DNA of 64,000 bases. Source: Saccostrea echinata. Its lineage: Eukaryota. The stretch's first letter is position 1, and each line of letters opens with the position of its first letter. A program made the position numbers and the translations under genes. The stretch is from contig NW_026889764.1 in NCBI RefSeq assembly GCF_033153115.1, positions 13,950,001 through 14,014,000 on the forward strand, in the 5' to 3' direction. The notes under the pieces were generated by a model that saw only the letters and a program-made list of their open reading frames with translations, searched no databases and was not told the DNA's origin. This document shows positions 5,709 through 58,369 of this stretch, one piece after another.

Positions 5709-8700
5709 ATGCTGGCTGTTAGATCAGTGATTGTCACGTGCATTATATGCATAATTGTAACTAATGTTGAAAGTGCATGCCGGAACCGCTGTGACAAATA
5801 CCGGACTGGTAAAGGAACAAAGCCTTGTTCCTATAAGCAAACAATGCAAGGAACCTCCTACCGTTCTTGTGGCTTTTTATGGCGAAGTCGGTGTCCGAAA
5901 GGAACGTAGGTGTAGCTTCAATGTGTAACTTATTATGGCCTTCGACATAAAATTGCACAATTTAAATATATAATCAGTCATTTTTAATGTAAAATTTAAT
6001 ATACTTTTTCAGCTATCTTTACTACACTACGAAGTATAAATGCTGTGACATAACCTGTTCAGGTTAGATGAGAAATAAAAGGGCGTGCGCAATATTCGCG
6101 TAATGTACATGTATTGCATGTTGAATTATATCCAATACATGTATTTACAAATTTTGTCATCATTAAGTATTTTATATTTTCACAAAATTCTAAAATTATA
6201 TTCTTCCTGAAGTATATAAGGTCAAAGTTAAGCATTTAATTAATTTTTTTTTATTACTGTAAGAAATAAGCAAGAATAAAGCATTCAGAATATAAAAAAA
6301 AATCTACTTTAAACCCGGACTAATTTTAAGTGCACATGTATTATGCAAATAAAGGACAATATGAAGAATATGATAGGATTTATCAAAGTGTTTTTTTTTT
6401 CTTTGAATTATAAAATTATATGATGTATATATTAAATGCTTCAATATTGTACAGTAAACGGGCGATGGGAACAATGGAGCAGTTGGTCGATGTCAACCTT
6501 CTGCACAAAAACCTGTGGAAGAGGTACGCAAACCTTCAAAAGGTCACGGCAATGTAATAATCCTACACCAAAATATGGAGGAAGAACTTGTTATGGATCA
6601 AGAAATGAATATAAGCATAATAGCTGTTTCATCAAGAAATGCCCAGGTTTGACAACGATATCATTATTGTTAATACGTCATTCCAAGTGTTCTCTGTTCT
6701 CCTTGAAAATACAAGGGCAACAAATTTTAAAAGAGAATTATACAAAAGAAATATCGCATGATTTATTATTGTACATAGGTCCCAAAACAGAGCAATTTAC
6801 ATGTAGTTTCACACTTTTAACATTCAATAAAATTTCATTTAAGTCGATGGTGTTTGGAAGAACTGGAGCACTTGGGCGTCTCAAGGATGGTGCTCAGTTA
6901 CCTGTGGGAAAGGTGTCTTAAAACAAAGTCGGTCACGTTCCTGCAATGGTCCAAAGTATGGAGGAAGAGATTGTATTGGAAAGAAAACAGAAATAAGAGT
7001 ACGTGATTGCAGTAAAGACTTTTGTCCAGGTAATTTTTTAGTTATGCTTTTAAAAACAACTATGTGTATAGGTTGTAGTTAAAACGAACAATAAGATAAA
7101 GAATTTTTATTGAAGTGAATGGTGCTTGGTCCTCTTGGGGTGAATGGGAGAAAATTGGAAAATGCTCTGTCACATGTGGAAATGGACAACAGAAGTATAT
7201 GCGAACACATAAATGTAATAATCCAACTCCACGAAACGGAGGAAAGGATTGTGATCAAACAAAAGCAAAGGAAATAAAACACAAGAAATGCGTTTTGAAA
7301 GACTGTCCCTTTGAAGGTAACTAAATTATAATATGATATGTGTGAGCCTTTTTCGAAAACGGGTTTTGCACGATTTTTTTTGTTTCTAGATCATCCCGTG
7401 TGCATGGAAAAAACCTGTAGTAGATACGGGGAATGTGGCTGTGCATTTGGGTTCTATGGGAATGGATTCAACTGCAAAGGTTTGGAATCTATTTCGAGAC
7501 AAATACTTTACTTTTTTGCTTATTTTAGTCACAAAATATCAAGTAATCTATCAAATGCAATATATCTTTAATAAAGGGAGTCAAGGTAAAAGATTTTTGG
7601 TGCTTTTCATGGAGACCATAGATGTGAAAGACACCCAAAATGATAGTAACAGATCAACAGAAATTCTCATTGCTTCTCAAGCAGCTAGCAAACTATCTTT
7701 GGATTCGTCAAACAATTATCTTTTAAAATCTTTAAACAATCGTATCAACAGCATCAATAAAGGGGCAACTACATTATCAATACCAGCTCGGATGCGAAGT
7801 ATAGATTTTAAGACAGAAAACAAAGCAATGATACTGGAGTCATCAGAACCAGTCTCTGTCTTTACACTCAACCATGATGGATACTCGTCAGACAGTACTC
7901 TTATTCTTCCAACAGACAGACTAGGGACAAAGTACGTTGTTGGGTCAACAGAACCTTATTCCTCGCGAGATTCGTCCCATAAGAGCCAGGTGGCTATCGC
8001 TGCACTTCACAACGACACAACCGTAAAAGTCACCTTGAAACTGAAATCTAAAGGCACATTTTTGTATCAGAATTTGAAATACAGGAATGGTGATAAGATA
8101 AATTTTAAGTTAAACAGGCTCGAAAATTTCCAGTTCTCTCATACATCAGATCTCACCGGAACTTTTGTTGAATCAAACAAACCCATTGCCGTTTTCTCTG
8201 GGAATCGCTGTAATAAATTACAGAGGTTTGGGTATTGCAGTCACTTAATTGAACAACTTCCTCCAGTGGATAATTTAGATAACCAGTTCATTGTACCCCC
8301 AAGCCTAGAAAGTAGTGGGACTAGAGTACGCATTGTTGCGGCTAAGAAGACAAAAGTAATATTTCATTTCGACGATTCAAAGAGGGAAAAAGTGTTGAAG
8401 CCAGGTACATCCAAGGACGTTGAGATTTATGGCCACCACTCCATTTATATTCAAGCTGATGGACCAATAATGGTTTTAAGCTTTGCTGTGCGGTTGGGTC
8501 GACGTGGGGAAGGTGACCCATACATGTCTGTTGTTCCCGGCTTCAACCAGTATCTCAGTGGTTATTACATTCTCGTTCCTAATGGATATACGAAAAATTA
8601 TCTATCCATCATGGTAAAAGCAGCATCAAAGGCCAAACTACGGATTGATGACAAGGCCTTGTTTGATGATAATATTTCCTCGGAAATCAGAGTTCAAGCT

Positions 8701-8853
8701 GAACGAGAGAAATATCTGGTATTAATTGTAAGGGTGGACGCTGGTGGGCATAAAGTTGAGACCCTTGATAAGTCAAGGTTTGGTCTAATGATTCATGGTC
8801 AAAAGGATGGAGACAGCTATGGCTATGCTGCCAACATTATAAAAGTTTCATAG
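5709..8853 (+). CDS. Gene A: secreted protein, signal peptide + EMI-like domain + 3x TSP1 + EGF-like + C-terminal IgGFc-binding-protein domain (730 aa spliced)
   Basis: Seven exons with GT-AG sites: 5709-5905, 6013-6062, 6455-6646, 6844-7029, 7116-7316, 7390-7479, 7577-8853. Total 2193 nt, in frame with no internal stop. Hydrophobic leader MLAVRSVIVTCIICIIVTNVES. TSP1 motifs WxxWxxW..CS/TxTCGxG..RxRxC..PKYGG. AATAAA near 8922. Confidence 0.9.
7577..8853 (+). CDS. Gene A terminal exon: IgGFc-binding protein N-terminal-type domain (FCGBP-like)
   Basis: Motifs GKRFLVLFME, SSDSTLILPTDRLGTKY, DLTGTFVESNKPIAVFSGNRC, SHLIEQLPP, GDPYM, FGLMIHG..SYGY. The ORF-track start at 7435 lies upstream of the exon-7 acceptor and is not the real start. 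Confidence 0.88.
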
Positions 8854-9469
8854 TGAACCATCGTTTCAAATTCCTTCTTTGGTATTTTTTCAAAGATGGT
8901 AACGATGTTGAATCACTGAAAAATAAAACAAATGCATGAAGAAAAAAATTCTTTCTTGTCTTTAAAAAGGTATAAAATGTACGGAAAATTTCATGGATAT
9001 ATAATGTATTTGTTTTTCTGTGCAATAATAACACAAATTAAGGTATAAGCATCTCAATTAATGTTTTTTTCCAAAAAGAAAAAAATCGAGAGTACGGAAA
9101 AAATCGATAAAAATATGTATATTAAATAACTCGCAACAAATGGTGCAAATTTCGTGTTAGATACCAATAATGCTTTCCTTGCGTGACAAAATATGAAACT
9201 AGAGAAGAACGATAAGATCAAACGCCTGCATGCTATTGGTCTGCTTCTTCATTCCTTTGGCAGCGGTTTGTGGTGATATTATCAAAGTTAAGTATTGTAG
9301 TTGATTTTTTTTCACTTAAAATTCTCTTTGTCGAATCAAGATTTCTGATGCAAACAAATCTTTACATTAAAATACATGTTTAAAATTATTATAAACCGAA
9401 ATTTGTTTAACAAAATATTCTCAAATATATAAAACTGTTCTAACCATACAACTTATTTGGTTTAAAGGG

Positions 9470-12305
9470 ATGACAAAGTCCATATTATTGGGTTTAGTCT
9501 TCTTCGCTTGTATTGGACAGCGCATTTTCGTAAATGCTTATTGCCGAAATCACTGCGATAGCCTTTATACAGGCCGTGGAACATATCAATGTCTCAAGAA
9601 ATATACAACAACTGGCTACTTTACACGTGGCTGTGGATGGTTATGGCGCAAACGATGTGTTACCGGAAGGTAATCATATGAAACTGAAAATTCATATACA
9701 TAAAGCATTAAGCAATTCAGTACATGTATTCATTTGATGCATTGAGGTATCTATTTTATATAGACAATTAATATGTTGAACATTTACTTGAACAGCTTCA
9801 AGAAGTATAATTCGAAAAATGCCTGTTGTTCAAAAACTTGCCCAGGTATTTCACTACACAATTAAAAATCTGACTTTAGACTCTAACATATCTATGTTTA
9901 ACAAATACATTGAGAAAAATATGACCAAATTCAAATATATCAAATTTTAAATATATCTTTTTTTTGATTTGAACTATATCATGTTATGATGCAGCAAGAA
10001 AATGTGCTTGTAGTAAATGGAAAATGGGGAAGCTGGAGTAGCTGGTCGCAAATTTCCGGTTGTTCTGTTACTTGTGGCCATGGAACGGAGAGGTTTAGAC
10101 GATTACGAAGCTGCAGTAATCCAAGCCCCAAATATGGTGGACAATCTTGCTATGGCTACAATTACGATAATGACTATAAGAGATGCTTTAGAAAATATTG
10201 TGAAGGTATTTGATATATTGATCTTTATTTCTCTTTGATACATGATATGAATTAAACCTTGCTTCAATTCGCGGAGTAATGAATTGGTTTTTGTGTCGCG
10301 AGTTCGAATCCGACTGCTGGACATGGAGACCGAGATTGCATAAACTTGTGGCAGTTAATCCTGGCACACAAAGGATCCCATGCAACTCTATGGCTATAAT
10401 TGCTGAATGCAGTTCATAACTTGTATTCTTGCACAAGCAATTGGAAGCGTACCAACACGAGTGAAACATTAAGGCACGTAAAACAACCACACATTAAAAC
10501 AACCGACGAAACTTCTAAAAAAAAGCCATCTGCAAGCATGATATCTAAGTTTGCTCCTAAAGTTAAGATATTGCACACCCGTCCTAAGATGAAAAAAAAA
10601 AACGTCCTTTACTCTCTACAACCGTCACCTTCCTAGTTCCTAAGTACTTAAAATTGCACAATCGTAATGTGCCATTAGAATGTTATCTAAAACAATTAAT
10701 GAGTTGAACTAATTAAGGATTGGAATTGTTGATGACAACATTAGTGAATTTGTTAAAATTTATCTTTATGTAGTTCTCCATTTCGTCCAGATGTATTTGA
10801 AAAAAAAATGGAGAAATTGAAATTTCTTTTTCTGATCAATATACGCTGAAATTTAAAGCTTCAGTGGTCATTTCTTAGTCGAGGTCTGCATGAAATTGAA
10901 GGAGACCCTATCGTATCAAAGAAAAGTTGAGTTGCTTATAAGCAAAGTTGTATAAGTTCCCTTTACACTATCCATTAGACTATTTACTATAGTAAAAGTA
11001 ATTTACGTCCGTTTGTCAGTTTGTTAATTATATAAAATTAATTTATCTGTTAGCTATGCAAGTCCTATCACAATGAAATATTCATACAATCCAATCTTTT
11101 AACCTTTTTCCAAGAATTTTTTAAGAATTATCTCCCAAATCTCTCCTAGTTATATCATCCTAAAAACTGTCTTAGGACCATCCTAAGTTTTATCCTATGA
11201 CACAATAAGTCATATCTTAAGACTTTTAAATGACACTTTCGAAAGCATACCTACTGTTCTCGAGACAATGAACTGAAAATATACTTAAGTTATAACTTCA
11301 AATAATAAAATAATTTTGAAAAGAGATTAAAGTTTTTGTCATGAGCTTGCATTTGAATATTGCTCCAATTTTTTTTCAAATAAAGTGGTGTTGATTGAAA
11401 ATAATGAAAAAGAAAACCTAGAAATGATGCGCCCCCAGCTCCTACACCCATCCTGAAAATAAGTGAAATAAAACAAAATGCATGAGAAGGAGACAATTGA
11501 ATAATGTTGACTGAAAATAAGTTTGCAATGTCATCTAATCATCAATTATCTTTGAAGTGAATTTAGACTCTACCAAAAATATGGTATTCGAATTTTAATA
11601 TCTCTATATATCATTGTTATATAAGTTAGATTTTATTATGTTGCAAAGTTCATGGCGGATGGTCAGCATGGGATTCTTGGAAGCCTCAGGGCTCATGTTC
11701 TGTGACTTGTGGATCAGGAATTCGAAAATTTACAAGATCTCGGTCATGCACCAATCCAGCTCCAAAATACGGAGGAAGAAGTTGTAGCGGACAAAAAACA
11801 GATTCTACGACAAGATCGTGTTTTTCTGGCAAACAGTGTCCAGGTAGCTTCAATTTTCCTTCATTTAGACCGTTAACGAGGATCACAAGTCTAATAGTTT
11901 ATATCTAATACCCTGCAAATTATTATGCGTGCATACACATATGTATGAAAAGAGGCTAAGGCTGATATGTAGTTATTCGTTCAAATGGGATAAGTATTAC
12001 ATTCAAATGTATTAGAATATGAGTACATCCGAGTTTTTAAACATTTTTTTTTCATTTACATTAAAGTTAATGGTAGATGGGGGAAATGGACCGCGCTAAT
12101 GCCGAAGTCACCTTGCTCTGTAACATGTGGGACTGGGGTACAGATATTCTACAAGAAAAGAGATTGCAATTCTCCTAAGCCGAGATATGGGGGCAATAAC
12201 TGCCGAGGAAAAGCACAACAAAAGTTAAGGAGGAAATGCTCTACAAATATTGCTTGTCCAGAAAAGGGTAAATCATTAACTAAGATATTGTTATTTACAC
12301 TTGTA

Positions 12306-12344
<39 letters not shown>

Positions 12345-13896
12345 TAGGATTTACTGAAAGTTAAAAGAATTCGATAACTCAATATGAAAGTACAATTTAC
12401 GTTCCAGATTCTATCACATGCAGAGAAAGACAATGTAGCGAGTTTGGTACGTGTAAATGTTCTTTTGGCTTTTATGGAGACGGATTTACGTGTACAGGTA
12501 CATAAAATACACATTTTTCGTTTAATAGTATCAATATCTTATCAGTCCTATTGTATAACATTAAGAAAAAAAGTAGGAGAAAATTGCTTTTATGGTATTA
12601 TAATATTTTACAGGAAGCTTAGGAAAGAAGTTTTTGGTATTGTTTATGGAAAACGCAGTTGATTACTTTAGCTACAAAGACCATTATTCCAGACTTTACA
12701 TCGCCTCTAGAAGAAATTGCACAGCTACGTTAAGAGCATCTTCCACGTTACCTACTAACATGAAAGCAAAGGTTTCTAGATCTCTTCAAGTGAGAGAAGG
12801 ACAAACTAAATTTGATGTTCCAATTAAAATGCGAACGCTAGATTTCAAACAAGAGAAGAAAGGGATAATTGTTGAGACATCTGAGGTGGTTTCCCTAATT
12901 GCTATGAGTTACGATGGTTATTCCTCAGATACGACACTCATTCTCCCAGTAGAAAGACTTGGTCGTCGATATTTGATAGGTTCCTCAGCCCCATATAACC
13001 CAGATTCCTCTGACTATAACAGTCAAGTTGCCTTTGTTGCTGCAGAGAATAATACAACAGTTTCTGTAACCTTCAACATAGACGATGGACACGTTCTTAA
13101 ATTCAAAAACAAAAAGTATAAGACTGGTCATAAAATGACGTTTAACCTGAATCAATTTGAGGACTTCCAGATATCTCACAATCGCGACCTAACCGGAACG
13201 ATAATTGAATCATCGAAACCCATTGCAGTATTTGCAGGAAACAGATGTAATAAACTGAAGAGACACGGTTACTGCAGTCATCTCGTGGAACAGCTTCCTC
13301 CTACTACTGATTTTGACACAACATTTATAGTTCCCCCAAGCCTTCGAAGGAGTGGAGGCATGATTCGAATCATTGCGTTGTCCAGCACAAAAATTAAGTA
13401 CGAAATCGACGGCGTGAAGGCAAATAAATCATTGCAAAAATCTCGCCATATTGATATCGAAGTGAAAGATAAAAGCATCACAGTCATCAAGTCGGATAAG
13501 CCCGTTTTGGTTCTTACTTTTGCCGTTCGAATCAGTCGTCGAGGCGGTGGCGATCCATACATGACAATGGTACCCGGGATGTCGCAGTATATTCATCAAT
13601 ACTATGTGCCGATTCCTAAAGGTTTCGATGCCAATTATATGACAATCATGATTTCCTCTAAGGCCAAGAAGTATCTGCGTCTCAACAAAAAACCGCTGTC
13701 GCCTGATTCCTTTGTGTCAGAGAAATCTGTGAAAGTTAATGGAGTTGATTATCTTACCATCGTCTTGAAAGTTTCAGGTGGTGCCCATGAGGTTGAAGCA
13801 ACAGATGGAACAAGATTCGGTTTATTGATCCATGGACAAGGAAGAGAAGATGGATATGGCTACGCAGGAAACGTTGTCCGCCCGGGCATTGTGTGA
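9470..13896 (+). CDS. Gene B: tandem paralog of gene A with the same architecture (736 aa spliced)
   Basis: Exons 9470-9669, 9796-9845, 10014-10205, 11649-11843, 12067-12267, 12408-12497, 12614-13896. Total 2211 nt in frame. Intron phases match gene A, and exons 2, 3, 5 and 6 have identical lengths (50/192/201/90 nt). Confidence 0.9.
10265..10500 (+). mobile_element. Old degenerate tRNA-derived SINE in gene B intron 3
   Basis: B-box GAGTTCGAATCC, CTGGCAC..AAAGGATCCC core and GAGTGAAA..CGTAAAACAA tail resemble the SINE at 59188. Confidence 0.5.
12614..13896 (+). CDS. Gene B terminal exon: IgGFc-binding protein N-terminal-type domain
   Basis: Motifs [77 protein letters not shown]. Colinear with gene A exon 7. 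Confidence 0.88.
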
Positions 13897-42316: not shown

Positions 42317-42467
42317 NNNNNNNNNNNNNNNNNNNNNNNNNNNNNNNNNNNNNNNNNNNNNNNNNNNNNNNNNNNNNNNNNNNNNNNNNNNNNNNNNNNN
42401 NNNNNNNNNNNNNNNNNNNNNNNNNNNNNNNNNNNNNNNNNNNNNNNNNNNNNNNNNNNNNNNNNNN
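42317..42467. other. Assembly gap
   Basis: Run of N. Confidence 1.
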
Positions 42468-44215: not shown

Positions 44216-44689
44216 ATGAACATCAAAGCGTCCTTTCTAATTTTCGCTTTTGTTGATTTTTTGCCCAGTGCACTAGCGTATGTTATTGCTTAATTTATCT
44301 TACAAATCAAACATTTAATAGCCATTAAGATATTTTTTAAAGTTTTTTTTTTCTTTTTGTTTTTGTTTTTGTTTTTTTTTTTTTTGTCTTTTCCAGTTAT
44401 TGCAATATTTGGAACGGGCGAAGAACGTATAAGTGCTATTATTATACGTATTCAAAATCTAAACATACCAAGTCATGTGGCTGGTTTAATTGGGGTAGAT
44501 GTGCATATTATCGGTAAGATCAGTACTATACTATTCTATTTGTAAATGATACAGGGAATTTTCCATAATAAAGTATAGTTATGATATCTATATGGTGTGA
44601 TTCAAAAGTGATTATATTATTTTTTTAACTTCATGTACTCAGGAAATCTTCCAAAGGATCATATAAATGGTGCTACGGGACATGTAAAG
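44216..44689 (+). CDS. Gene C leader and EMI-like exons
   Basis: [21 protein letters not shown]|[39 protein letters not shown]|[15 protein letters not shown]. Strong polypyrimidine acceptor at 44395-44396. Not in the ORF track in this frame. Confidence 0.8.
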
Positions 44690-47600: not shown

Positions 47601-50600
47601 AAGATTTCACTGATATTTTGCAGATAGAGCAAACATTGGCATATACGGTTACTTAATCATCATAAAATCATTTCTTGAAGACTGGTATATACAAACTATT
47701 ACACAACTAAAATATAAATATTTCAATTTTTACGACATTTTTCATGTTCTCAATAGTTAACGGCAAGTGGGGTAGCTGGTACAGTTGGTCCTAATATACC
47801 GGGTGTAGTAGATCATGTGGGTATGGAACAAAGACTTTGATTCGCAAGAGATATTGTAATAAGCCTTACCCGAGATATGGAGGAAAGAGTTGTGGAGGAT
47901 CATCTCGGACTTACAAGTCAGTTCGATGTTTCAAAAAATATTGCCAAGGTATTTGTTTCACTTTGGTTTGAAGAGTAACACGTGATATAAAAACGTATTT
48001 CAAAAGTATAGGCATATTTACCATTGTAATGCTGTATATTATCAGACATTAGAATTTTGATTGAAGCACCGGTTTCATTTGTAAGTTGAACGTAAATGTA
48101 GCCATTACCTCATTTCAAACATGCTAACATGTTGAATGCCTGGCAAAGGTTTCACAGGTTCAAATTTCAGGAATATACATAAAACTTTCCACCATTAATA
48201 TATCTTTTCTCTTAGTATTTAACTTAAATGCTTCGTAAGTATTGCTTGAATATTGTATATGTTTACTTGTCAAATAGTCCACGGTGGTTATACTAGCTGG
48301 GGATCTTGGAAGTCCTGCAGTAGATACTGTGGAGGTGGAACTAAATATCGATCGTGTACAAATCCAAGACCAAAGTATGGTGGTAGGAAATGTAGAGGGT
48401 CCACATATCAGTACACTTCATGCAACACTCATAAATATACGGGTTAGTGTTATTTTTTTAATTTTAGAAGTACTTTGTGGATGATTTACAAAAATGGCTG
48501 AAATATTGCCGACTAGGCATTAAACAATAAACAATGGATTTTTGATACTATTATTCTTTTAACGTAGAACCTACGTCGTATGACGTCATATCAAGTAAAT
48601 CAGTTTAGACCGTCTTTTTGATGCTAGATCCATTATGACGTCATAATTAATCTAATGTTACTTTTCTCCTTATTTTCTCCAAGACTGTCTCATGAAATGA
48701 AGTTACACAAGTTACAAAACTATGATAATGTGAATGGCATGCAACTATTTTGAAGGAAATCAAAAATCCTAAGAAATCTAAAGAGTACAATATCTTGATA
48801 AAAATGTCTCTGAGATAAAGATCTGTTAAAAATTGTGTGTAATTTTTTTAATGTCTATCATGAAATGACGTGCATTCTCTTTCATAATTATTTGTTATTT
48901 ATTCATAATGGTTGGTGTATAATAATAATGTTTCCCTAAAATATCTTTTTAAATAAAAAAAAAATACATTTTTTGATAAATATTTACATTGTAAATTTGA
49001 ACGTAACCCCTAACCAGTCATTTAATAATTAAATCCTGTGTTAGTGCTGAAAGGTCAACAAAAGAAGTAAATAGAGTGTCTCTCATTCGTTTGTGGGGAA
49101 AGGTATATATTTGAATCACTTTTTGTAATTATTTGGGTATGTTCTTCATCATATTAAAGATTGAAAACATTCTGACAAAGCCTTTTGAAAAATATTTACA
49201 AATTTAGTTGGTAAATTGACTCAAAAAATAGTGAGCACATTTGCCTATATTCGTTGAAATGTGGACTTAATCTTTCATGTCAATTGATTTAAAAAGAATT
49301 TATTCTTGAATAATATTGCTTAATACGGTTCAGTTGATAAAGTCTATAAACGACGATGTTTGAAGAAGTATTGTTGTGATTTTCTATATTCTCATTATGA
49401 CCAGTACCCCTAAAAATGGCTGAAAATATCTAGTCGCAGCGTAAAATTATCATTCCAGGTTGCACAGGCAGTACTACATTTAATAACAAGGAAACATGCC
49501 ATATATTTTTATCTGATTGACAAGCGAGTGCTAATTTATCATTTTGAAAAGTTTGAAAATCTTGTGACAAAGACTTTTCCGACATAGGTTCTACCTTAAG
49601 GTTTAGTTTTCTTCCTTCCGTCTTCATCAGTTGCAAATTTTAATGGTTTTCCAATAATTTNNNNNNNNNNNNNNNNNNNNNNNNNNNNNNNNNNNNNNNN
49701 NNNNNNNNNNNNNNNNNNNNNNNNNNNNNNNNNNNNNNNNNNNNNNNNNNNNNNNNNNNNNNNNNNNNNNNNNNNNNNNNNNNNNNNNNNNNNNNNNNNN
49801 NNNNNNNNNNNNNNNNNNNNNNNNNNNNNNNNNTTACTTTAAGACACGTAATATACAAACTAATACACACCATAAATACAGATATTTCATTTAAGTTTTT
49901 CTTCTGTCGTTATCGGTCGCAAATTTTAATGATTTTCCTATAATTTTATCAAGAGTCAGTTCGATGTTTCAAAAAATATTGCCCAGGTATTTGTTTTACT
50001 TTGGTTTGAAGAGTTTCATTTGTGATAAAAGTTTGTTCCAAACATAACGACCTTTTCGTCATAGTAATTTTGCATATTGTCAGATGGCAGAATTGCAAAT
50101 AAGGCACTGATAACATTTGTACATTGATAAGAAATATCGCTTTATTTAAAATTCAAACATATTGAATTTCCGACAGGGGTAATTCAGGTTTATAATGCAT
50201 GAACATATTTAGCATTGACGAATCTCGCCTCCTCTGTATATCAACCATCAAAGTGCTCAATTATGCATAAATCCTGAAAGGTAAATTTATGTTCAACAGT
50301 TCATGGTGGTTTTTCAAATTGGGGATCTTGGAATTCTTGCAAAAAAACCTGTGGCGGTGGAACTAAATTCCGATACCGATATTGTACAAATCCGAGACCA
50401 AAATATGGTGGAAAGGAATGCAAAGGCTCGTCATATCAGTACACATCATGCAATAACCAGAAATGCCCAGGTAATGTTTTAGTTGAATTTATCATAAAAG
50501 TATCTCGTTATCTTAACAGAATCATTTTACTTTGTCAATTTTTCAATACTTTAGTTATGAAGCATCCATATTATCATGGGTAAAGAATTAAATGTACGTT

Positions 50601-51183
50601 TCTTTGTTGTATAAATAAACTATTTATAGACCATTTATGTGAGAAACCACATGATATTTTTTTATTTAAAAATCTCACGAATGCTAAACACAGTTCACGG
50701 CGGTTATACAAGCTGGGGAGCATGGTATTCCTGCAATAAGCCTTGTGGAGGTGGAACTAAAGTCAGATATCGATCTTGTACGAATCCTAAACCTCGGTAT
50801 GGTGGAAGGAAATGTAAAGGGTTGTCATATCAGAACAAGTCCTGCAATAACAAGAAATGTCCTGGTAACTGTTTAAATTACAGACCTCGTCTGATTTGTT
50901 AATTCACAAAAAATGTGCATATATATCTGTGATGAATATTGAAATATATTTATTTGTTTATCATTTTTGTTTTGTTTTGGAATAAGAGTAGAAAAAACAT
51001 ATAGTTTGTTTTAAGAACAAGAAAACGTAAAGGTAACACAAATTGAAAAAAAAATATCATATGAACGATTTTTATAAAAAGAATCGATACATTAGTAACA
51101 AGTTTTGTTGTATATTTTTTGAATAATTAAAAATGAATATATTTTTTATTTCTTTGGTCATTACTTGCAAGTAAGCAAAACAC

Positions 51184-51231
<48 letters not shown>

Positions 51232-51896
51232 TTTCTTTACTATCTCCAGACGTAACAGAATTATGAATAACGAATGAATAATGATCACCTTTTCTAAATA
51301 CAAGTCTATTTTTCATTACAGAACGACTACGTTATTCATGTATTATATTTTGATTTTCTTTTTTATTGGATGAATAGCTTGTATTACATGAACACATTTT
51401 TGAAAGCTTTTGTGATAAGATACATGCACATTCAAGGGAATAAGTATTAAGTTCATTATTGTATTTGTGTTTCATAAGTCAAGGGTGGCTATACTAGCTG
51501 GGGAGCATGGAGCTCCTGCAATAAATCCTGTGGAGATGGAACTAAAACCCGATATCGATATTGTACAAAAACCTAAACCTAGGTATGGTGGCAGAAAATG
51601 TAAAGGGTTGTCATACCAATACACATCATGCAATAACCAGAAATGCCCAGGTGCGTGTTTGTACTTGCATTGGCGATAAGATATGTGCTTTTTTACGAAC
51701 ACAATTACAAATCATTCATATTTTTGTTTTCTGTTATGTATATACTGCATTTTGTTTTCAAATATTGTTGGGTTTGTTAAGTTATCAACTAAAATGAATG
51801 GTTCTGTACCTAGTGTGTTTTGTACCACTTGAACAAAGAAATTTTGTCAGGTATTTAGACAAACGGTCTTTTCACTGGTGTCTGTTGTAAATTGCA

Positions 51897-51948
<52 letters not shown>

Positions 51949-54900
51949 ATATATATATTTATATATATATATTATATATATATCGTATCCGGTTTTTAAT
52001 TAAATCAAATATTCATAAAAATACCAACAGTTCATGGTGCTTACACTTCTTGGGGAAGTTGATCTGTCTGTACTAAATCATGTGGTGCAGGAATTAAACG
52101 GCGGTACCGTTACTGTACAAATCCAAGACCCAGATATGGAGGAAAGAAGTGTGTAGGAGCATCAAATCAATACAAACCCTGCAATACGAACAATTGCCCA
52201 GGTCAGTGATTTAATGATCCGTCAAAACAATACTAAATGTATAATTATAAAAGATCGATTTCATGACAAATCGATAAAAAATTACAAACTATATGATCAA
52301 TCTTTGTAATGCTTTTGTTTGCAAATTATAAATTCACAAATACACGAATTGTGTACTACAATGTAGTTATAATCATTTCATGATATATTTCATAATCTCG
52401 GATGAAACACTTATCCCCCTTTAAACAGTAGTAAACCAAGGCAAAGTTCTACATGTATTGCAAAAATAAAAAAAAGAAATGCACTTTAAGCATTGGAAAC
52501 ATTTGTAAGACTGCTTTTGACAATGCTATACATGTATATTGAATATATTTTAACTTTCAGTTCATGGTAGATGGGGAAGTTGGGGGCAATGGAGGAAAAG
52601 TGGACAATGTAGTAAACAATGTGGAACTGGAAAACAGTCTTATTACAGGAAACGGGCTTGTATTCCACCGAAATATGGAGGCAAACAATGTTCTGGGAAA
52701 AAAGTCGAATATAAAACGAAATTTTGTCTGATCAAATATTGTCCAGGTAGATCGTCAATTTTTAAAAGTCATATAATATTTTGCTAGAAAAAGATTCATC
52801 ATAATATGGATTATGATAAAATTCTAAACTTAAATTGAAACTTTCATGTGTTTGTGATAGGAATATCAACGAGTACCCGGTTAACCGGGTACTCGATTGA
52901 ACGTCCGAGTATCGAATACTAAAAATGGTATTCGGTTACTAATCATCATAAACATGCGTAACGGATTGTTCTCCTTTTGATGAAATTTAGATCCTAAACA
53001 AGAACCTTTTTGGTGAAATAGATCCTAAACAAGAACCTTTGGATGAAATAGATCCTAAACAAGAACTGTAAACCATTTGTAATTTTTGATGTATTTATTG
53101 TGTTTTTTATGTTTGATAAATAAATTTAGAACTAAAAATCATTTCCATTGGAATCAATGTTTATTTAAGAAATAAGGTATCATTTTTAAACATCTATCGG
53201 GATATAAATACGGGTTGGTCACGATATCAAATTCCACAAAGCCCGAAGGGCTTTATGGTAAATATGATCTCGTACCAACCCGTATTTATATCGCAATAGA
53301 TGTTAAAAAAATTATACATTATTACTTATATTTACATTTATGACTTATTTATATTTTATATTTTCCCAATTATAATCTTTAACGCGTAAAATGTTTTATT
53401 TTTCAAACTCAACGGCACGTATTTGATCCACTGATTGCGCGTCGACCCATTATGACGTCACTGAGAAATTACGTCGAACGTTTATGACGCGAGGAACCCG
53501 TGTTTATACGGATATAGATACGCATTGCTTTTAATAGTGTTATATAAAGAAAACATTTGCAAATGTAAATATATACATTTATAAACGTGATAAAACAGCT
53601 ATGGGATTTAACAGAGCTTAACGGCTCTCATGAAAATTAATGCATTTGTATTTATATTTTTTTACCGAATACCCGGGTACTCGATCGGTAAAACGTCCGA
53701 GTAACTGATTATTAAAAATTGACTGATTTGACACCACTAGTTTGTGATCATATCCATATTGGAACCTTTCGATATAAATCAGTAATTTTAATTTTAGAAA
53801 ATACAAGTTTTCCAAATTCAATGCTGTATATCTTAATCTCAGTTTTTCCTCTTTGAAAACGTCGTTCATATTTAGAAATAGAAGCAAAACAAATATTTCT
53901 GGAAGCATTATCCAATAAAAGCAAATACGTTATTAACACATCAATCAATATAGCATCCGGATTTACTGCTCTTCTGAAAGCTATACAACACTTTAAGCTT
54001 TTTTTCAATTTCATTCTTTTGCTTCCAGTAAATGGGAATTGGACTAGTTTTGGAGCATTTACCAAGTGGACTCCCTGTATTGTTACTTGCGGGGGTGGTA
54101 TAACTTCAAGACAACAATACCGTTCATGTACTAACCCTGCTCCTGCCTATGGGGGAAAATCTTGCTCCGGGGATAGTATAAGAATTGAAAAAAAGGATTG
54201 CAATAGGAAACCATGTCCAAGTAAGCATTTCATAATGTTTTCACTCATTTTCATCCTAAAACCAATATTTTGACATACATTTTCTTTTCACTATTGACCA
54301 TTTATGCAAAGGACTAAAGGTACTTATGAAGTAAAAACCTTGTAAGTGTTTGATTGTTGAATTAACAGAAATAAAGCTGTTGAATTAAAAATGATTTATC
54401 CATGTAAATGAATAAATGAATTTAACAGTGTGGATTTGAAATTCTACTACTTATTACATTGAATATGATTGATTTAACTGTACATGTATATTCCTATAAA
54501 AAAAATTTCTGCAAGTTCGAATTGTCAAAGTTTCTACTTCGATCTATTTTTACATGTTAGCAATAATATTGTATGATTTTAGTTGATGGCGTTTTGTTGA
54601 CATGGGGTAGCTGGAATATGGTTGGAAGTTGTAGCAAAACGTGTGGAAATGGTTCACAAATTTATCAAAGGCAGCGTACCTGTATTCCACCAAAATATGG
54701 AGGGAAATCATGTACTAGTAAAACTGCACAAACGAAAACTACAGCATGCTTTCTAGGACATTGTCCAGGTTAATATTATTGAAGAATTTTACCTTAAACA
54801 ATGCAAGATAATTGTAAGGTGCATCTTCTATAAGCAGCATTTGATTAAAACTTTCTGATTTTAATTCCTACCCAGTTGATGGTAATTGGACAGAATTTGG

Positions 54901-57900
54901 ACAATTTACGGATTGGTCTTCATGTGACGTCACATGTGGCGGAGGTACAATCTCCAGATGGCAGATCAGAAACTGCACAAACCCTGCGCCAACCTATGGA
55001 GGAAGATATTGTAATGGGTCAGGAATAAGCATTGAATCAAAATCGTGCAACTCCTACCCTTGTTCAGATAAATACATGTAATTACTTAAAGAAACTAAAG
55101 TAATACATGTACATGGATTATTTAATACATAATCATCATTGAGATTTCTGAAGGATTTTTCCTAATCGTCTGTCTATCCCATAGCTTGTCGAGCTGTGCG
55201 GAGAGTGCTTGGTGTTTTGCTTACTTAAAATTAAAATTGAATTAAATGAAAAGGTCAAAGACTTTCGGTCATTTCAAGATTCAAACAAGGTACCAAACGA
55301 GCCCATTTCTCAAAGAACATGTTAATCTTTTTTTTTTTTTCTTTTTGAGTTGATTTGGAAAATCGAGGAAGGGGAAGGATGTTTATGATTTAACTAGAAT
55401 AAGATGTGGAAAGGAAATATACCACTCTAAAAGGATTTTTTTTAAATTTATTTCATATGTACTGTCTATATTGACAGGATTTAGTTTACACTCAAGTTTG
55501 GTGAGACAGCTTACAGAAAAGTGAGGAAGGTCAAAACTGAAAAAGACATGCAGTCGAGCTTTACGAAGTATTAAATAAATGAAGTCGATCATTTTTTGTG
55601 GATAAAAAATTACTTTATTTCTTCGAGTTTTGTGTTATTTAACTTCTCACCAAGTTCATCTTTTCTAGAAAAAATACTAGCTGGAAAAAATATTCAATTA
55701 AGGAGGAGGATCTTATATTAATTTTTGTTTGAAAAAAAATTTGTAATATGTCTATCACGTGAAAATAAGGATAATAGAAGTTGTGTTTATGGTTTGTATT
55801 TGTTCTTAATCTGCTTGACTCTCTCAACCTCTGTTGAACATATGAAAAACATTTAACCTTTACATCTTCTATAAAAGAGACAAATACAACAAGAATATCA
55901 GACGGAAAAAAGTCCCAAGTATTAACTACAACATCGTCAGTAATGAAACCAATGGTAACCACGTCGGAGACTAAAACGAAATCAACTATATCTCCTGTTA
56001 CTACATATGGTAATGATTCTCTCAAAGCGAAAACTAAACAATCTGAGCTTTGCAAAACAAATACCCCTACGCCTTTTTATGGTATTTATGAAGTAACAAC
56101 ATTAAAGAAGGAAAGTTCTTCAAAGTTTGAAATTCAGACACAAATTGATGAAGAAAATAAACAAACAAATGGGTCTTCCCAGATGGAGGACACAAATAAT
56201 GGATTCATATTGACAACAAAACAATCTGCTTCTGATGTAATGGCAGAAAAGACAACAACTCTCCCCGAACACGCTCCAGTTGTCAGCTCTCCTAGCGCAC
56301 AACATCAGACAACAAGGGGTCATGAATATGATTATAAAAACACAGGCGATACAAAAGGAAATATATCGATAGCATTTAACAATAATACTGTAACTAACAA
56401 CACGTCAACAGTTACAACCACAAGATATATTGGAAAGAAACCTGAAGAGACCACTCTGAATTTTTCAGGTTCACAGTTCCCACGAACAACCACAATTTTG
56501 CCTGACAAATCAACTATAGTTACGACAACTGAATTCAAAGGAGACGAAAATTCAGGTAAAAAAACAAATGAGCAATACTTAGGCAATTTAACTGATGAAG
56601 TAACAACTTCCGTTGTTTTGGAAAAGATAACAATTTCAGCAACGCAAACAAGTGAAAACAAAATAAAGCCAACAGTGATAGCTATAACGACTCAATCTGA
56701 CAATATGAAAGAAAACGACGAATCTGGAAAAATTAACATAAAGACCTCAACCACAACCAATTCTCCAGAGAGTAAGTCAGGACTTATCACAACAATGTCC
56801 TCGGATACTTTTGCTACCACTACCGTAACAAATGACGAAGCAACGAGAGATTCAAGTATGATAACGAATAACCAGGAAAAGACAAACAACAACACCCAAA
56901 AAATTACAGGAGAAACAAAGATGACAACATTCTACAATACCTCAATTTACAACAATCATAGTAAGTCAAATGAGAATTTTCCAATTTAAAGGCTCAGTAA
57001 AAATTTTGTGAGAATTAATTTTCAGATAAAGAATATTTCCACGGGAATGTATTAGGGAAAAAATCATCTTTACGAGAGCATCAGAGTCCGGATTAATATG
57101 TAACATATTCAGGCGGCGCTGATTTATATAATTCAAATTAAACCTCCTAGTAAAGGGCGACTACCTATTATTCGATATAAATGGGATAAATGTTTCCAAA
57201 TCGTCTTCAAAATAAAACGGTTGGGCTGCATGTGCTGGAGTTCCAGTGTAATATAAGTTTATATTTGTTCAAATAATTGTCTTTAGGGCTAGGGTTGGCT
57301 AGAATAGTGAATTAATGCATAACTTGGAATTTAAAAACTTTTATTCAAATGAACATGGTTTCTTTTGCTAAATATACTTTCATTCTACATTTCTAATTAA
57401 CCATACTTAAATCATGCATAAATCACTTTTACATCAAATGAAATATGGAGATAACGAACAGTATTCAAACTCAAAGTCCATTAAAACAATATGAATCAGG
57501 AGCAGAGCAATCACGGACCTTTAAAAACATCAGAGGTGGGATCAGGTGCCATGGAGGAGTGAACATCCCCTGCCAACCGATCACATCCGCCTTGTGCTCC
57601 TTGTCATGATTGGTAAAACGGGAAAATCCGTCGACAATTCAGTGTTTAAATAATGGCCCACGAATAAGTATGAAAAACGTCAGTCAGCATATGACTTAAT
57701 GATAGATTGCATTAGCTGACAAGGTCAGTGTATCGCCCATAGAACTAACGAAATGATGACTTTTGACACATCAAAATGAAGTTCTGATATATTAAAATTA
57801 AGTTTTAGTAATTAAAAAAAAAATGATTTATCGTTATAAGATATAAATACCAATACCGTGCATTGTATGTCTATTTAGCATGCAAGAATGTTCCTGTGAA

Positions 57901-58369
57901 TCAAAATGAAATATCCGTCACAAGTAAGGAATACTCTGGGCGAAATTATTCCACCATTTTCTACAGTGAGGGGATTGTTTTGACGCCTTTTAATGGAACA
58001 ACCGTTCTCAATGTCATCTTTAATTTGCCTTTGAATCTAACAACTCTTGAAGCCATGCTAATGAATCATGAAAATGTGGATGTAAAACTGTATGATAAAG
58101 CTGGAAAAGCCATTAAAGAAAAGGTAAAATTTAGAACAATAATTATAGCAGTTTAAACATTTCACTCACAAATGACGTATGTTCGTTACATCATAACATC
58201 ATTTTCAAGAGTGTTTTATCTTATGTATAATATGCATGTATGCTTTCAGGTCACAGAACATAATTATTATACAGCAGTCATCACAAAAATTCAAATTTCA
58301 ATATTTGCGCATGACCCGGAAGAAGAAATCACTGTAGCAGAACTACGTGCGGTGGCCTGTGTGGACTAG
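44216..58369 (+). CDS. Gene C: secreted multi-TSP1 protein, signal peptide + EMI-like + TSP1 exon array + Thr/Ser-rich stalk + C-terminal domain; several TSP1 exons are disabled
   Basis: Leader and EMI-like exons 44216-44277, 44397-44513, 44643-44689. TSP1 exons 45106-45297, 46788-46979, 47289-47459, [47757-47948], 48278-48442, [49951-49986 fragment], 50300-50470, 50694-50864, [51479-51650], [52031-52201], 52561-52746, 54029-54220, 54583-54768, [54876-55067]. Stalk 55878-56960. C-terminal exons 57879-58123 and 58250-58369. Skipping the bracketed exons gives an open 3300-nt CDS (1099 aa). Confidence 0.75.
45440..45730 (+). mobile_element. Old SINE-like remnant in a gene C intron
   Basis: Core GGTCTTTCGGAAGAGACATTAAAAACCGAG resembles the SINE central domain seen at 59300. 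Confidence 0.4.
46417..46676 (+). mobile_element. 3'-truncated tRNA-derived SINE fused to a HINE-like terminus
   Basis: GGCGCAGTGGTTAGAGC (A box) and GGTTCGAATCCC (B box). After CCACCGGCAAG the sequence switches to GCCTTCGGCTCAAGTGAGCTAA. Confidence 0.8.
47757..47948 (+). pseudogene. TSP1 pseudo-exon with in-frame TAA
   Basis: Copy of exon 46788-46979; TAA at 47792-47794 where the paralogous exon has CGA. Splice sites are intact. Confidence 0.85.
49661..49833. other. Assembly gap inside the TSP1 exon array
   Basis: Run of N. Confidence 1.
49951..49986 (+). pseudogene. 3' remnant of a deleted TSP1 exon
   Basis: Intron sequence nearly identical to about 47527-47584 is joined directly to ..[10 protein letters not shown] plus a GT donor. 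The acceptor and most of the exon are missing. Confidence 0.8.
51479..51650 (+). pseudogene. TSP1 exon with +1 frameshift
   Basis: 172 nt versus 171 nt in sister exons. An extra A in the run at 51567-51571 creates TAA at 51574. Could be a homopolymer sequencing error. Confidence 0.7.
51898..51984. repeat. (AT)n/(ATAG) microsatellite
   Basis: Seen directly. Confidence 0.95.
52031..52201 (+). pseudogene. TSP1 exon with TGG>TGA nonsense change
   Basis: [18 protein letters not shown]..; TGA at 52060-52062 replaces the conserved Trp. Confidence 0.85.
52858..53739. mobile_element. hAT-like MITE with 8-bp TSD, containing a nested palindromic element
   Basis: GTTTGTGA at 52850-52857 and 53740-53747; TAG...CTA termini; CCGGGTACTCGAT subterminal motifs; 3x ~30-bp repeat at 52980-53067. 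Confidence 0.8.
54876..55067 (+). pseudogene. TSP1 exon with lost splice donor
   Basis: Intact 192-nt TSP1 frame ([24 protein letters not shown]...CNSYPCS), but the donor reads AG|ATAAAT instead of GT. Read-through meets TAA within five codons. Confidence 0.7.
55878..56960 (+). CDS. Gene C Thr/Ser-rich mucin-like stalk exon
   Basis: 1083-nt phase 1-1 exon, low complexity in T/S/E/K/N, with many NxS/T sequons. Donor GTAAGT at 56961. Confidence 0.82.
57445..57765 (-). mobile_element. Penelope-like element 3' end
   Basis: Homologous to 26170-26520 and 63600-63790. Confidence 0.7.
57879..58369 (+). CDS. Gene C C-terminal domain exons (57879-58123, 58250-58369)
   Basis: TCKNVPV...KAIKEK|VTEHNYY...ELRAVACVD*. 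Phases are compatible with the stalk exon. Beta-strand-like pattern with one Cys at each end. Confidence 0.7.

What the first reader, a model, noticed from the sequence alone, without database searches (positions are those of the whole stretch)
5709..58369. Four-gene family cluster: one EMI-like + TSP1 'head' joined to three different C-termini
Seen: genes A, B, C and D all begin with a signal peptide and a ~55-60-aa Cys/Tyr/Trp/Lys-rich domain (..SCGW/FxWxxRC..Y..CxxxC). That domain is always split by a phase-2 intron and followed by phase-1 TSP1 exons. Each gene also has an AG acceptor 0-2 nt before the ATG. The tails are EGF + IgGFc-binding domain (A, B), mucin stalk + small beta domain (C), or nothing (D). 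Known: EMI domains are N-terminal Cys-rich interaction modules (emilins, MEGF10/Draper), and symmetric phase-1 exons are the classic shuffling units. Inference: a lineage-specific modular kit of secreted proteins that may co-assemble into a mucus, adhesive or immune matrix.
Basis: partly seen in the sequence, partly recalled or inferred. Interest (0 to 1): 0.8.

Follow-up and report, generated by a model that had tools for sequence, protein, structure and literature searches.

The report
Oyster TSP1 genes sharing new head
Four neighbouring oyster genes for secreted thrombospondin-repeat proteins really do share a small, undescribed cysteine-rich N-terminal domain joined to different tails, but that domain shows no detectable EMI match and its function is unknown.

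Summary
The window is Saccostrea echinata (contig C15). The core observation holds. Genes A (5709-8853, +), B (9470-13896, +), C (44216-58369, +) and D (36444-35626, minus strand) each encode a signal peptide and a basic, aromatic-rich 54-60-aa head with 6 or 8 Cys. The head is split by a phase-2 intron at the same place and is followed by a phase-1 exon.

Spliced transcript contigs confirm every junction of A and the first junctions of B. They also confirm a 5'UTR intron ending 1 nt before A's ATG. NCBI's models of A and B miss or misframe the head; the C. virginica ortholog has it.

A and B tails are EGF-like plus IgGFc_binding (PF17517). C is a TSP1 array (three exons disabled, one assembly gap) followed by a Thr/Ser-rich exon and a two-exon C-terminal domain; that junction is unverified. 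D ends in a unique Cys-rich exon that is not detectably TSP1.

"EMI-like" is not supported. Pfam's EMI model finds nothing in the heads but detects single exons of true EMI domains in this genome. AlphaFold models of the head are unreliable.

A profile search of 1.84 billion proteins found only five head fragments. The genome holds at least three more head-plus-TSP1 genes. Function and co-assembly remain untested.

The parts
5289..5322 (+). Gene A: 3' end of the 5'UTR exon (its start is not mapped). Donor AAAG|GTAAAA.
   Evidence: The loose end of contigs in X1 and X3 matches 5289-5318 exactly.
5708..5905 (+). Gene A exon with the ATG (5709), the signal peptide and head part 1. It has 5 Cys and ends in phase 2.
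   Evidence: Sequence. Joint 5905>6013 in X1.
6013..6062 (+). Gene A head part 2 (YLYYTTKYKCCDITCS), phase 2 to phase 1.
   Evidence: Joints 5905>6013 and 6062>6455.
6455..7316 (+). Gene A: three TSP1 exons (6455-6646, 6844-7029, 7116-7316), all phase 1-1.
   Evidence: Joints. Pfam TSP_1 hits. They agree with P0001.
7390..7479 (+). Gene A EGF-like exon (5 Cys), phase 1-1.
   Evidence: Joints. Boundaries. No significant Pfam hit.
7577..8853 (+). Gene A last exon: IgGFc_binding domain and stop codon.
   Evidence: PF17517 at E 2.7e-57. Contigs cover it.
9468..9669 (+). Gene B exon with the ATG (9470), the signal peptide and head part 1. Ends in phase 2.
   Evidence: Sequence. Joint 9669>9796 in X1, X2 and X3.
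9796..9845 (+). Gene B head part 2 ([16 protein letters not shown]).
   Evidence: Joints 9669>9796 and 9845>10014 in three runs.
10014..12267 (+). Gene B: three TSP1 exons (10014-10205, 11649-11843, 12067-12267).
   Evidence: The first is confirmed by a joint, and a loose end reads into the second. The others follow P0010 and the splice sites.
12408..12497 (+). Gene B EGF-like exon (5 Cys).
   Evidence: Pfam EGF_3 at E 0.018, below the cut-off.
12614..13896 (+). Gene B last exon: IgGFc_binding domain and stop codon.
   Evidence: PF17517 at E 5.2e-57.
35626..36444 (-). Gene D, four exons: 36444-36377 (signal peptide, ends in phase 2), 36261-36136 (head part 1), 36041-36001 (head part 2), 35837-35626 (69-aa basic tail with 8 Cys, then stop). 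In total 148 aa, 14 Cys, open reading frame.
   Evidence: Head significance. The tail is not TSP1 by HMM and is single-copy in the genome. No RNA evidence.
44216..44277 (+). Gene C signal-peptide exon. Donor GC|GTATGT, phase 2. An AG lies 2 nt before the ATG.
   Evidence: Sequence. Predicted only.
44397..44689 (+). Gene C head: exons 44397-44514 and 44643-44689 (6 Cys).
   Evidence: Sequence. Leave-one-out profile E 1.7e-5.
45106..55061 (+). Gene C TSP1 array of 13 phase-1 exons. Intact: 45106, 46788, 47289, 50300, 50694, 52561, 54029, 54583, 54876. Exon 48278 has a 6-nt deletion and has lost its last Cys. Disabled: 47757 (stop), 51479 (1-nt insertion), 52031 (stop). Gap 49661-49833 lies in an intron.
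55878..56960 (+). Thr/Ser-rich 'stalk' exon: 1083 nt, phase 1-1, 21% T, 11% S, 10 N-glycosylation sequons, little Pro.
   Evidence: Open frame. Boundaries read from the sequence. Composition. Its link to the TSP1 array is inferred only.
57879..58369 (+). Gene C C-terminal domain of about 120 aa in two exons (57879-58123, 58250-58369). It runs from Cys to Cys and ends at stop TAG 58367-58369.
   Evidence: No Pfam family. Three paralogs on the same contig.

Best explanation
This is part of an apparently narrowly distributed family of secreted thrombospondin-repeat (TSR) proteins, documented here in two oyster genera. The family is defined by a previously undescribed N-terminal domain of 54-60 residues. 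The domain has 8 Cys in A and B and 6 Cys in C and D. It is strongly basic (19-26% Lys+Arg, almost no Asp/Glu) and rich in Tyr and Trp. Its core motif is C-G-[WF]-x-W-x3-C.

The family most likely grew by local duplication of a unit made of head plus TSR. Tails were then gained or lost through symmetric phase-1 exons: EGF-like plus IgGFc_binding in A and B, a Thr/Ser-rich stalk plus a small C-terminal domain in C, and a short Cys-rich tail in D.

Shown here: the family, its exon structure, transcription and splicing of A and B, and the domain assignments of the tails.

Inferred: the head is a compact domain stapled by disulfides. The way cysteines are lost together predicts two pairs, C4-C5 and C1 with one Cys of the CC doublet. 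I propose that the head acts as a common binding or targeting module for an anionic extracellular partner such as sulfated glycans, mucus or matrix polymers. The TSRs would form an extended adhesive stalk, and the different tails would add different functions in one extracellular material.

The confidence given (0.75) is for the family, its structure and its origin. The proposed binding function on its own rates about 0.3.
For: - Homology of the four heads. Conserved position and phase of the intron.
- Splicing of A and B in transcript contigs from two studies.
- The C. virginica ortholog P0004 has signal peptide, head, three TSP1, EGF-like and IgGFc_binding.
- The tree of the IgGFc tails gives separate A and B clades, each holding further database sequences (only C. 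virginica P0004 is named), at 100% support. The duplication therefore appears old and retained.
- At least 7 head loci exist in the genome. Every one with more than a minimal tail is followed by TSP1 exons.
- One paralog about 180 kb away repeats gene C's design: a head-like exon, a TSP1 array and the same C-terminal domain.
- All modules are phase 1-1.
- Tail modules occur with other partners. EGF plus PF17517 occurs without TSRs or with a fibrinogen domain. The C-terminal domain occurs with other upstream exons.
- Composition.
- Co-loss of cysteines: C1 and one Cys of the CC doublet are absent together in C and D, and C4 and C5 are absent together in the L020 copy.
Against: - There is no functional, localisation or tissue evidence.
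- The fold of the head is unknown. Both AlphaFold runs gave pLDDT of about 42-58 for the head, with contradictory secondary structure.
- C and D are predictions without RNA support.
- The last TSP1 exon of C has no donor compatible with the stalk exon. Its phase-1 donor would create TAG at the junction.
- No database protein of 204-649 aa contains the stalk exon.
- Three TSP1 exons of C are disabled. These could be assembly errors or real decay.
- 'Duplication as a unit' and 'shuffling of the head alone' cannot be separated with sequences this short.
- The organisms of the five extra head fragments are unknown.
Confidence: 0.75

Rival explanations
1. The head is a shortened, divergent EMI domain. 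It would then work as an N-terminal protein-protein interaction or multimerisation module, as in emilins, multimerins and MEGF10/Draper.
For: - It sits directly after the signal peptide.
- It has a CC doublet near its C-terminal end, preceded by a Tyr-rich stretch.
- A true EMI domain of this genome (L025, 28.6 bits) is also split by a phase-2 intron just before its Tyr-rich, CC-bearing half.
- A paralog of gene C's C-terminal domain is preceded by an exon reading ..YRTIETCCPGYYGPRC, also entered in phase 2.
Against: - Pfam EMI finds nothing at E<=10 in any head exon or in the complete C. virginica head.
- It finds nothing in this cluster in the six-frame genome scan.
- The same model does detect single exons of real EMI domains, at E 4e-4 to 5e-3.
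- The heads have 8 or 6 Cys with CC-x3-C or C-x(1-3)-C. They lack the CC-x-G-[WYF] motif seen in this genome's own EMI exons (CCPGW, CCHGW, CCEGF).
- The second head exon is half as long as the EMI second exon.
- The profile search of 1.84 billion proteins returned no protein beyond head fragments and one spurious repeat protein, and none shows EMI-type sequence.
Confidence: 0.2
2. Only A and B are working genes of this kind. C is really two genes or a decaying gene: head plus TSRs ending at TAA 55078-55080, and a separate stalk plus C-terminal-domain unit. D is an unexpressed relic. The 'four-gene kit' would then overstate what is there.
For: - There is no RNA or database protein for C or D.
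- Three of 13 TSP1 exons in C carry stops or a frameshift, and one has lost a Cys.
- The last TSP1 exon runs into a stop and has no donor that fits the stalk exon.
- D's tail has no relatives in the genome.
Against: - D keeps an open 148-codon frame over four exons, with canonical splice sites and matching phases.
- The stalk exon is a 361-codon open frame in 32% GC DNA, has no signal peptide of its own, and is phase 1-1.
- TSP1 exon 54583-54768 joins it in frame.
- A paralog combines a head-like exon, a TSP1 array and the same C-terminal domain on one strand.
- Disabled phase 1-1 exons can be skipped without breaking the frame.
Confidence: 0.2
3. The head is not an independent domain but a derived piece of TSR: a compressed Trp/Arg ladder plus a CSxTCG-like motif. 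The proteins would then be plain TSR arrays.
For: - The motifs GWLWRKRC and CCSKTC / WCYGTC recall the W-x-x-W, R-x-R and CSVTCG elements of TSRs.
- MAFFT placed the second head exons onto the CSxTCG column of TSP1.
- B's second head exon is a top sub-threshold hit of the local TSP1 profile, at E 0.64.
Against: - No TSP1 Pfam model hits the head at E<=10.
- The order of the motifs is reversed relative to a TSR.
- E 0.64 is noise.
- The exon structure (a phase-2 split) differs from the single phase 1-1 TSR exons.
Confidence: 0.07

Closest known systems
Crassostrea virginica LOC111107180 (P0004, 729 aa, 'uncharacterized protein')
   Same: It is the ortholog of gene A: 63% identity in the tail, and it falls in the same clade. 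It has the full architecture of signal peptide, 8-Cys head, three TSP1, EGF-like and IgGFc_binding.
   Different: It is from a different genus and is uncharacterised.
EMI domain (Pfam PF07546; emilins, multimerins, MEGF10/Draper)
   Same: Both are N-terminal Cys-rich modules placed after a signal peptide. Both have a CC doublet after a Tyr-rich stretch. Both are split by a phase-2 intron, as in this genome's own EMI gene.
   Different: There is no HMM match, although positive controls match. The head is 54-60 aa against about 69-75 aa. It has 8 or 6 Cys with different spacing and no CC-x-G-[WYF] motif. Its fold is unknown.
Oyster 'IgGFc-binding protein-like' proteins (EGF + PF17517, e.g. C. 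virginica P0014; M. gigas P0022, P0023)
   Same: They have the same EGF-like plus IgGFc_binding tail, and they are the sister clade of A and B. Proteins of this name are discussed as mucus or larval-adhesive components in C. gigas (PMC6337334).
   Different: They lack the head and the TSRs. One carries a fibrinogen C domain instead. Most of the C. gigas proteins in that paper are annotated as zonadhesin-like; their domain content and relation to A and B were not checked here.
Pinctada fucata byssal TSP-1 protein (PMC4597212)
   Same: It is a secreted bivalve protein that combines a low-complexity Ser-rich region with a long TSP1 array, as in the proposed gene C. It has a structural or extensible role in an extracellular material.
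   Different: It has 24 TSRs plus a VWA domain, and neither this head nor this C-terminal domain. This is a functional analogy only; no homology was tested.

Membership tests
EMI domain (PF07546) | Match to the Pfam EMI profile | tested here: not met
   There is no hit at E<=10 for the head exons of A-D or for the complete C. virginica head. The six-frame genome scan gives no hit in this cluster. Positive controls: single exons of real EMI domains in this genome score E 4e-4 to 5e-3.
EMI domain (PF07546) | C-terminal CC-x-G-[WYF] signature and about 7 Cys over about 70 aa. Seen in this genome's EMI exons, and known generally. | tested here: not met
   The heads end in CC-x3-C (A, B, C. virginica), C-x3-C (C) or C-x-C (D). 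They have 8 or 6 Cys in 54-60 aa.
EMI domain (PF07546) | EMI fold | tested here: inconclusive
   AlphaFold2 on the head alone gave pLDDT 48.6 and a helical model. On head plus TSP1, the head part gave pLDDT 42-58 and a beta model. No fold search was run on models this poor.
Thrombospondin type-1 repeat (PF00090) | Match to TSP_1 profiles; WxxW ladder and CSxTCG motif | tested here: met
   The sampled exons of A and C and the C. virginica ortholog match Pfam TSP_1. All A, B and C exons score 1e-28 to 5e-8 with a local profile. D's last exon is not met: no hit in Pfam or in the local profile.
IgGFc_binding domain (PF17517) | Full-length match above the gathering score | tested here: met
   A scores 194.7 bits and B scores 193.8 bits, each over profile positions 1-297 of 297.
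EGF-like domain | Six-Cys EGF pattern or a Pfam EGF match | tested here: inconclusive
   B matches EGF_3 at E 0.018, below the cut-off, and A has no hit. Both have the C-x-C-x2-G-[FY]-x-G-x2-C end but only 5 Cys in the exon.
Mucin-type PTS stalk | Pro/Thr/Ser-rich low-complexity region | tested here: inconclusive
   The exon has 21% Thr and 11% Ser, Pro is not among its eight most frequent residues, and it has 10 N-glycosylation sequons. No Pfam family matches.

The most novel reading that the evidence does not exclude
The head is a new disulfide-rich fold, or a miniaturised offshoot of EMI, apparently confined to a narrow lineage (documented here in two oyster genera). It would serve as a shared address label: it docks TSR proteins with different tails (IgGFc-binding-type adhesion domain, glycosylated stalk, short cationic peptide) onto one extracellular polymer. 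The cluster would then encode the parts of one secreted material such as mucus, larval cement or an immune coat.
Probability: 0.25. Interest if true: 0.6.

Novelty: new variant of a known kind. Interest (0 to 1): 0.42.

Why it matters
Modular TSR proteins and lineage-specific gene expansions are well known in oysters, so the general picture is not surprising. What is new is a small Cys-rich domain with no Pfam family, no solved relative by sequence and almost no database footprint. It consistently caps TSR arrays, and current NCBI models of this genome cut it off or misframe it. It offers a clean natural example of phase-1 exon shuffling around a fixed N-terminal module. It also yields testable predictions for disulfide pairing. 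If the proteins turn up in mucus, cement or shell-matrix proteomes, the head becomes a candidate targeting or assembly module for bivalve extracellular materials.

Tried and rejected
- My regular-expression and tblastn scans first found only three heads. D was missed because of a 3-residue insertion and its minus strand. It was found after an earlier scan note.
- A word search with the C. virginica head found only that protein itself.
- A PDB sequence search with the head profile gave only one chance hit at E 8.8. The IgGFc tail also has no PDB relative.
- Both AlphaFold jobs gave unusable head models, so I ran no fold searches.
There is therefore no synteny check in C. virginica.
- A search with the stalk exon found no protein.
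- The listing of cluster members gave no organism names for the five head fragments.
- P0039, the top hit of the big search, is a spurious repeat protein that matches only profile positions 2-21.
- Paper searches for the locus names and for PF17517 gave nothing useful.
- The exon in L017 reading CCPGYYGPRC looks EMI-like from memory, but it has no Pfam hit, so I keep it only as a lead.
Exons were searched one at a time, and the database protein P0004 supplied the only contiguous head.

Full report
**Source and scope.** The window is Saccostrea echinata, contig C15:13950001-14014000, with 32% GC and two N gaps. These are spliced eukaryotic genes, so I read the exons from the sequence and searched them one at a time. 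The one contiguous head sequence I used is the database protein P0004 from Crassostrea virginica.

**The observation.** Motif scans found about 19 TSP1-type exons on the plus strand, and heads at 5709, 9470 and 44397. An earlier scan note on a minus-strand Cys-rich gene led me to the fourth head, gene D at 36444-35626. All four genes have the same layout:
- A hydrophobic signal peptide. It shares an exon with the head in A and B. In C and D it sits on its own exon, which ends in phase 2.
- Head part 1, which ends in phase 2 two to three codons after the Cys that closes the C-G-[WF]-x-W-x3-C loop.
- A head part 2 exon of 41-50 nt, carrying CC-x3-C (A, B), C-x3-C (C) or C-x-C (D), which ends in phase 1.
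- A phase-1 exon that starts with a Trp ladder.

An AG lies 0-2 nt before each ATG.

**RNA evidence.** My single read-laying run went to 5650-11640. Contigs of three runs, from two studies and two organism labels, are spliced with GT..AG joints at the positions I had predicted for A; the EGF and last-exon joints agree with the NCBI model instead. Those positions are 5905>6013, 6062>6455, 6646>6844, 7029>7116, 7316>7390 and 7479>7577. For B the joints are 9669>9796 and 9845>10014, after which the contigs read into the second TSP1 exon. A loose end upstream of A's ATG maps to 5289-5318. Read together with the genome sequence, A's 5'UTR exon ends at 5322, and the intron 5323-5707 ends 1 nt before the ATG. 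The heads of A and B are therefore transcribed and in frame.

NCBI's models are wrong at the 5' end. LOC133187646 (P0001) starts inside the intron before the first TSP1 exon. LOC133187647 (P0010) reads B's first exon in the wrong frame and skips the second head exon. The C. virginica ortholog LOC111107180 (P0004) has the predicted architecture.

**Is the head similarity real?** Leave-one-out profiles were scored against all 2072 open segments of the window.
- A profile of C plus the two unlinked copies finds A at 2.2e-7 and B at 1.9e-6.
- C scores 1.7e-5 when it is left out.
- D scores 0.0079 when left out and ranks directly behind the three other heads. None of 5000 shuffles of D reaches its score.

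**Assembly gaps.** Gap 42317-42467 lies between the 5' ends of D and C. It touches no predicted exon but could hide C's 5'UTR exon. Gap 49661-49833 lies in an intron of C's TSP1 array, 1.2 kb and 0.47 kb from the nearest exons. A 49-nt repeat flanks it on both sides. Every exon of the array is phase 1-1, so the frame does not depend on the gap, but the number of repeats does.

**The tails.**
- *A and B.* After three TSP1 exons come a 90-nt EGF-like exon (5 Cys; Pfam weak or silent) and a large last exon. That exon matches IgGFc_binding PF17517 end to end, at E about 1e-57.
- *C.* It has 13 TSP1 exons of two tandemly duplicated subtypes. Nine are intact. One has a 6-nt deletion and has lost its last Cys. 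Three are disabled: stops in 47757 and 52031, and a 1-nt insertion in 51479. After the array come a 1083-nt phase 1-1 exon (21% Thr, 11% Ser) and a two-exon C-terminal domain of about 120 aa with no Pfam family.
- *The link in C is inferred.* Exon 54583-54768 joins the stalk exon in frame. The last TSP1 exon (54876-) would create TAG with its only phase-1 donor, or else runs into TAA at 55078. No database protein of 204-649 aa contains the stalk.
- *D.* It ends in a 69-aa basic exon with 8 Cys. The exon starts WGSWATWSSWS but is not TSP1 by Pfam or by a local profile, and it is unique in the genome.

**The wider family.** A head profile finds at least three more loci in the 923-Mb genome:
- C12:11996294, followed by at least 5 TSP1 exons.
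- C29:18742965, followed by at least 7 TSP1 exons.
- A divergent copy at C15, about 14.192 Mb, in which the two Cys of the CGW..C loop are both replaced.

That last gene continues into a TSP1 array and ends with the same two-exon C-terminal domain as gene C. This is the best support for gene C's proposed architecture. The C-terminal domain has four copies within about 170 kb. One follows TSP1 exons. Another follows an exon reading ..YRTIETCCPGYYGPRC.

The IgGFc tails of A and B fall into two separate clades at 100% support, and each clade also holds further database sequences, of which only C. virginica P0004 is named. The two clades together are sister to oyster 'IgGFc-binding protein-like' proteins that lack TSRs. 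The A/B duplication therefore appears old and retained.

**What is the head?** None of the following gave a match or a usable model:
- Pfam gives nothing at E<=10 for any head exon or for the complete C. virginica head.
- A profile search of 1.84 billion representative proteins returned one spurious repeat protein and five short fragments. Each fragment is a signal peptide plus head part 1 that runs on into non-coding-looking sequence, consistent with intron read-through. Their organisms are unknown.
- A PDB sequence search gave nothing.
- Two AlphaFold2 runs gave head pLDDT of 42-58 with contradictory secondary structure, while the attached TSP1 was confident. I therefore ran no fold search.

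For the EMI question I used the genome as its own control. The Pfam EMI model finds four sites in the genome, none on C15. It also recognises single exons of those true EMI domains at E 4e-4 to 5e-3. Failure on the heads is thus not simply due to the domain being split. One parallel remains. The true EMI domain in L025 is also split by a phase-2 intron before its Tyr-rich, CC-bearing half. I put the chance that the head is a real but very divergent EMI derivative at about 0.2.

**Mechanism.**
- *Shown.* The family, its exon architecture, expression of A and B, and the tail domains.
- *Inferred.* The head is a compact, basic, aromatic-rich module with 3-4 disulfides. The co-loss of cysteines predicts a C4-C5 pair and a pair of C1 with one Cys of the CC doublet.
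- *Proposed, at about 0.3 probability.* The head is a shared binding or targeting module for an anionic extracellular polymer, the TSRs act as a stalk, and the tails carry distinct functions. The literature gives only an analogy: IgGFc-binding-type and TSR proteins are discussed as mucus, larval-adhesive and byssus components in bivalves (PMC6337334, PMC4597212).
- *Co-expression.* My only evidence is that A and B both occur in the same three runs.

**Verdict.** 'EMI-like' is not supported, and co-assembly is untested. This is a new variant of a known kind: modular TSR proteins carrying an undescribed N-terminal domain. It is of moderate interest.

Noticed in passing
window 5709-6455 and 9470-10014: NCBI gene models LOC133187646 and LOC133187647 have wrong 5' ends. 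The first starts in the intron before the first TSP1 exon. The second reads B's exon 1 out of frame and skips the 50-nt second head exon. Spliced contigs contradict both models.
   Followed up: yes
G000:C15:14030862-14031056 (L017 6862-7056) with 14031692-14032836: An exon reading ..GYRRVTRYRTIETCCPGYYGPRC, entered in phase 2, lies about 600 bp upstream of a paralog of gene C's C-terminal domain. It looks like the second half of an EMI domain, but Pfam gives no hit.
   Followed up: partly
G000:C15:14174928, 14103046 and 14031692; window 57879-58369: Gene C's C-terminal domain is a small local family of four copies within about 170 kb. No Pfam family matches it. Upstream partners differ: a TSP1 array in two copies and the CCPGY exon in one.
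   Followed up: partly
G000:C15:~14192209-14192544 (L020 9544-9209, minus strand): This is a divergent head copy (SYCDKNTGIKTYKC..SRGYWTPSRHGYG) in which both Cys of the CGW..C loop are replaced together. That suggests the two form a disulfide.
   Followed up: partly
window 47757-47948, 51479-51660, 52031-52201, 48278-48442: Three TSP1 exons of gene C carry a stop or a 1-nt insertion, and one has a 6-nt deletion and has lost its last Cys. All keep their AG and GT splice sites. Real decay and assembly error cannot be told apart without reads.
   Followed up: partly
window 15303-16251: A perfect tandem repeat of 3.0 copies of 315 bp (100% identity) lies in the intergenic DNA after gene B.
   Followed up: no
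window 20485-21028: Open frames here look like fragments of a reverse transcriptase (..FPVQQNIRQGGVLSTFLY..), probably a retroelement remnant between genes B and D. This was not checked against Pfam.
   Followed up: no
alignment A4: MAFFT placed the second head exons (CCDITC, CCSKTC, WCYGTC) on the CSxTCG column of the TSP1 repeats. This is a short motif resemblance without statistical support (E 0.64).
   Followed up: partly
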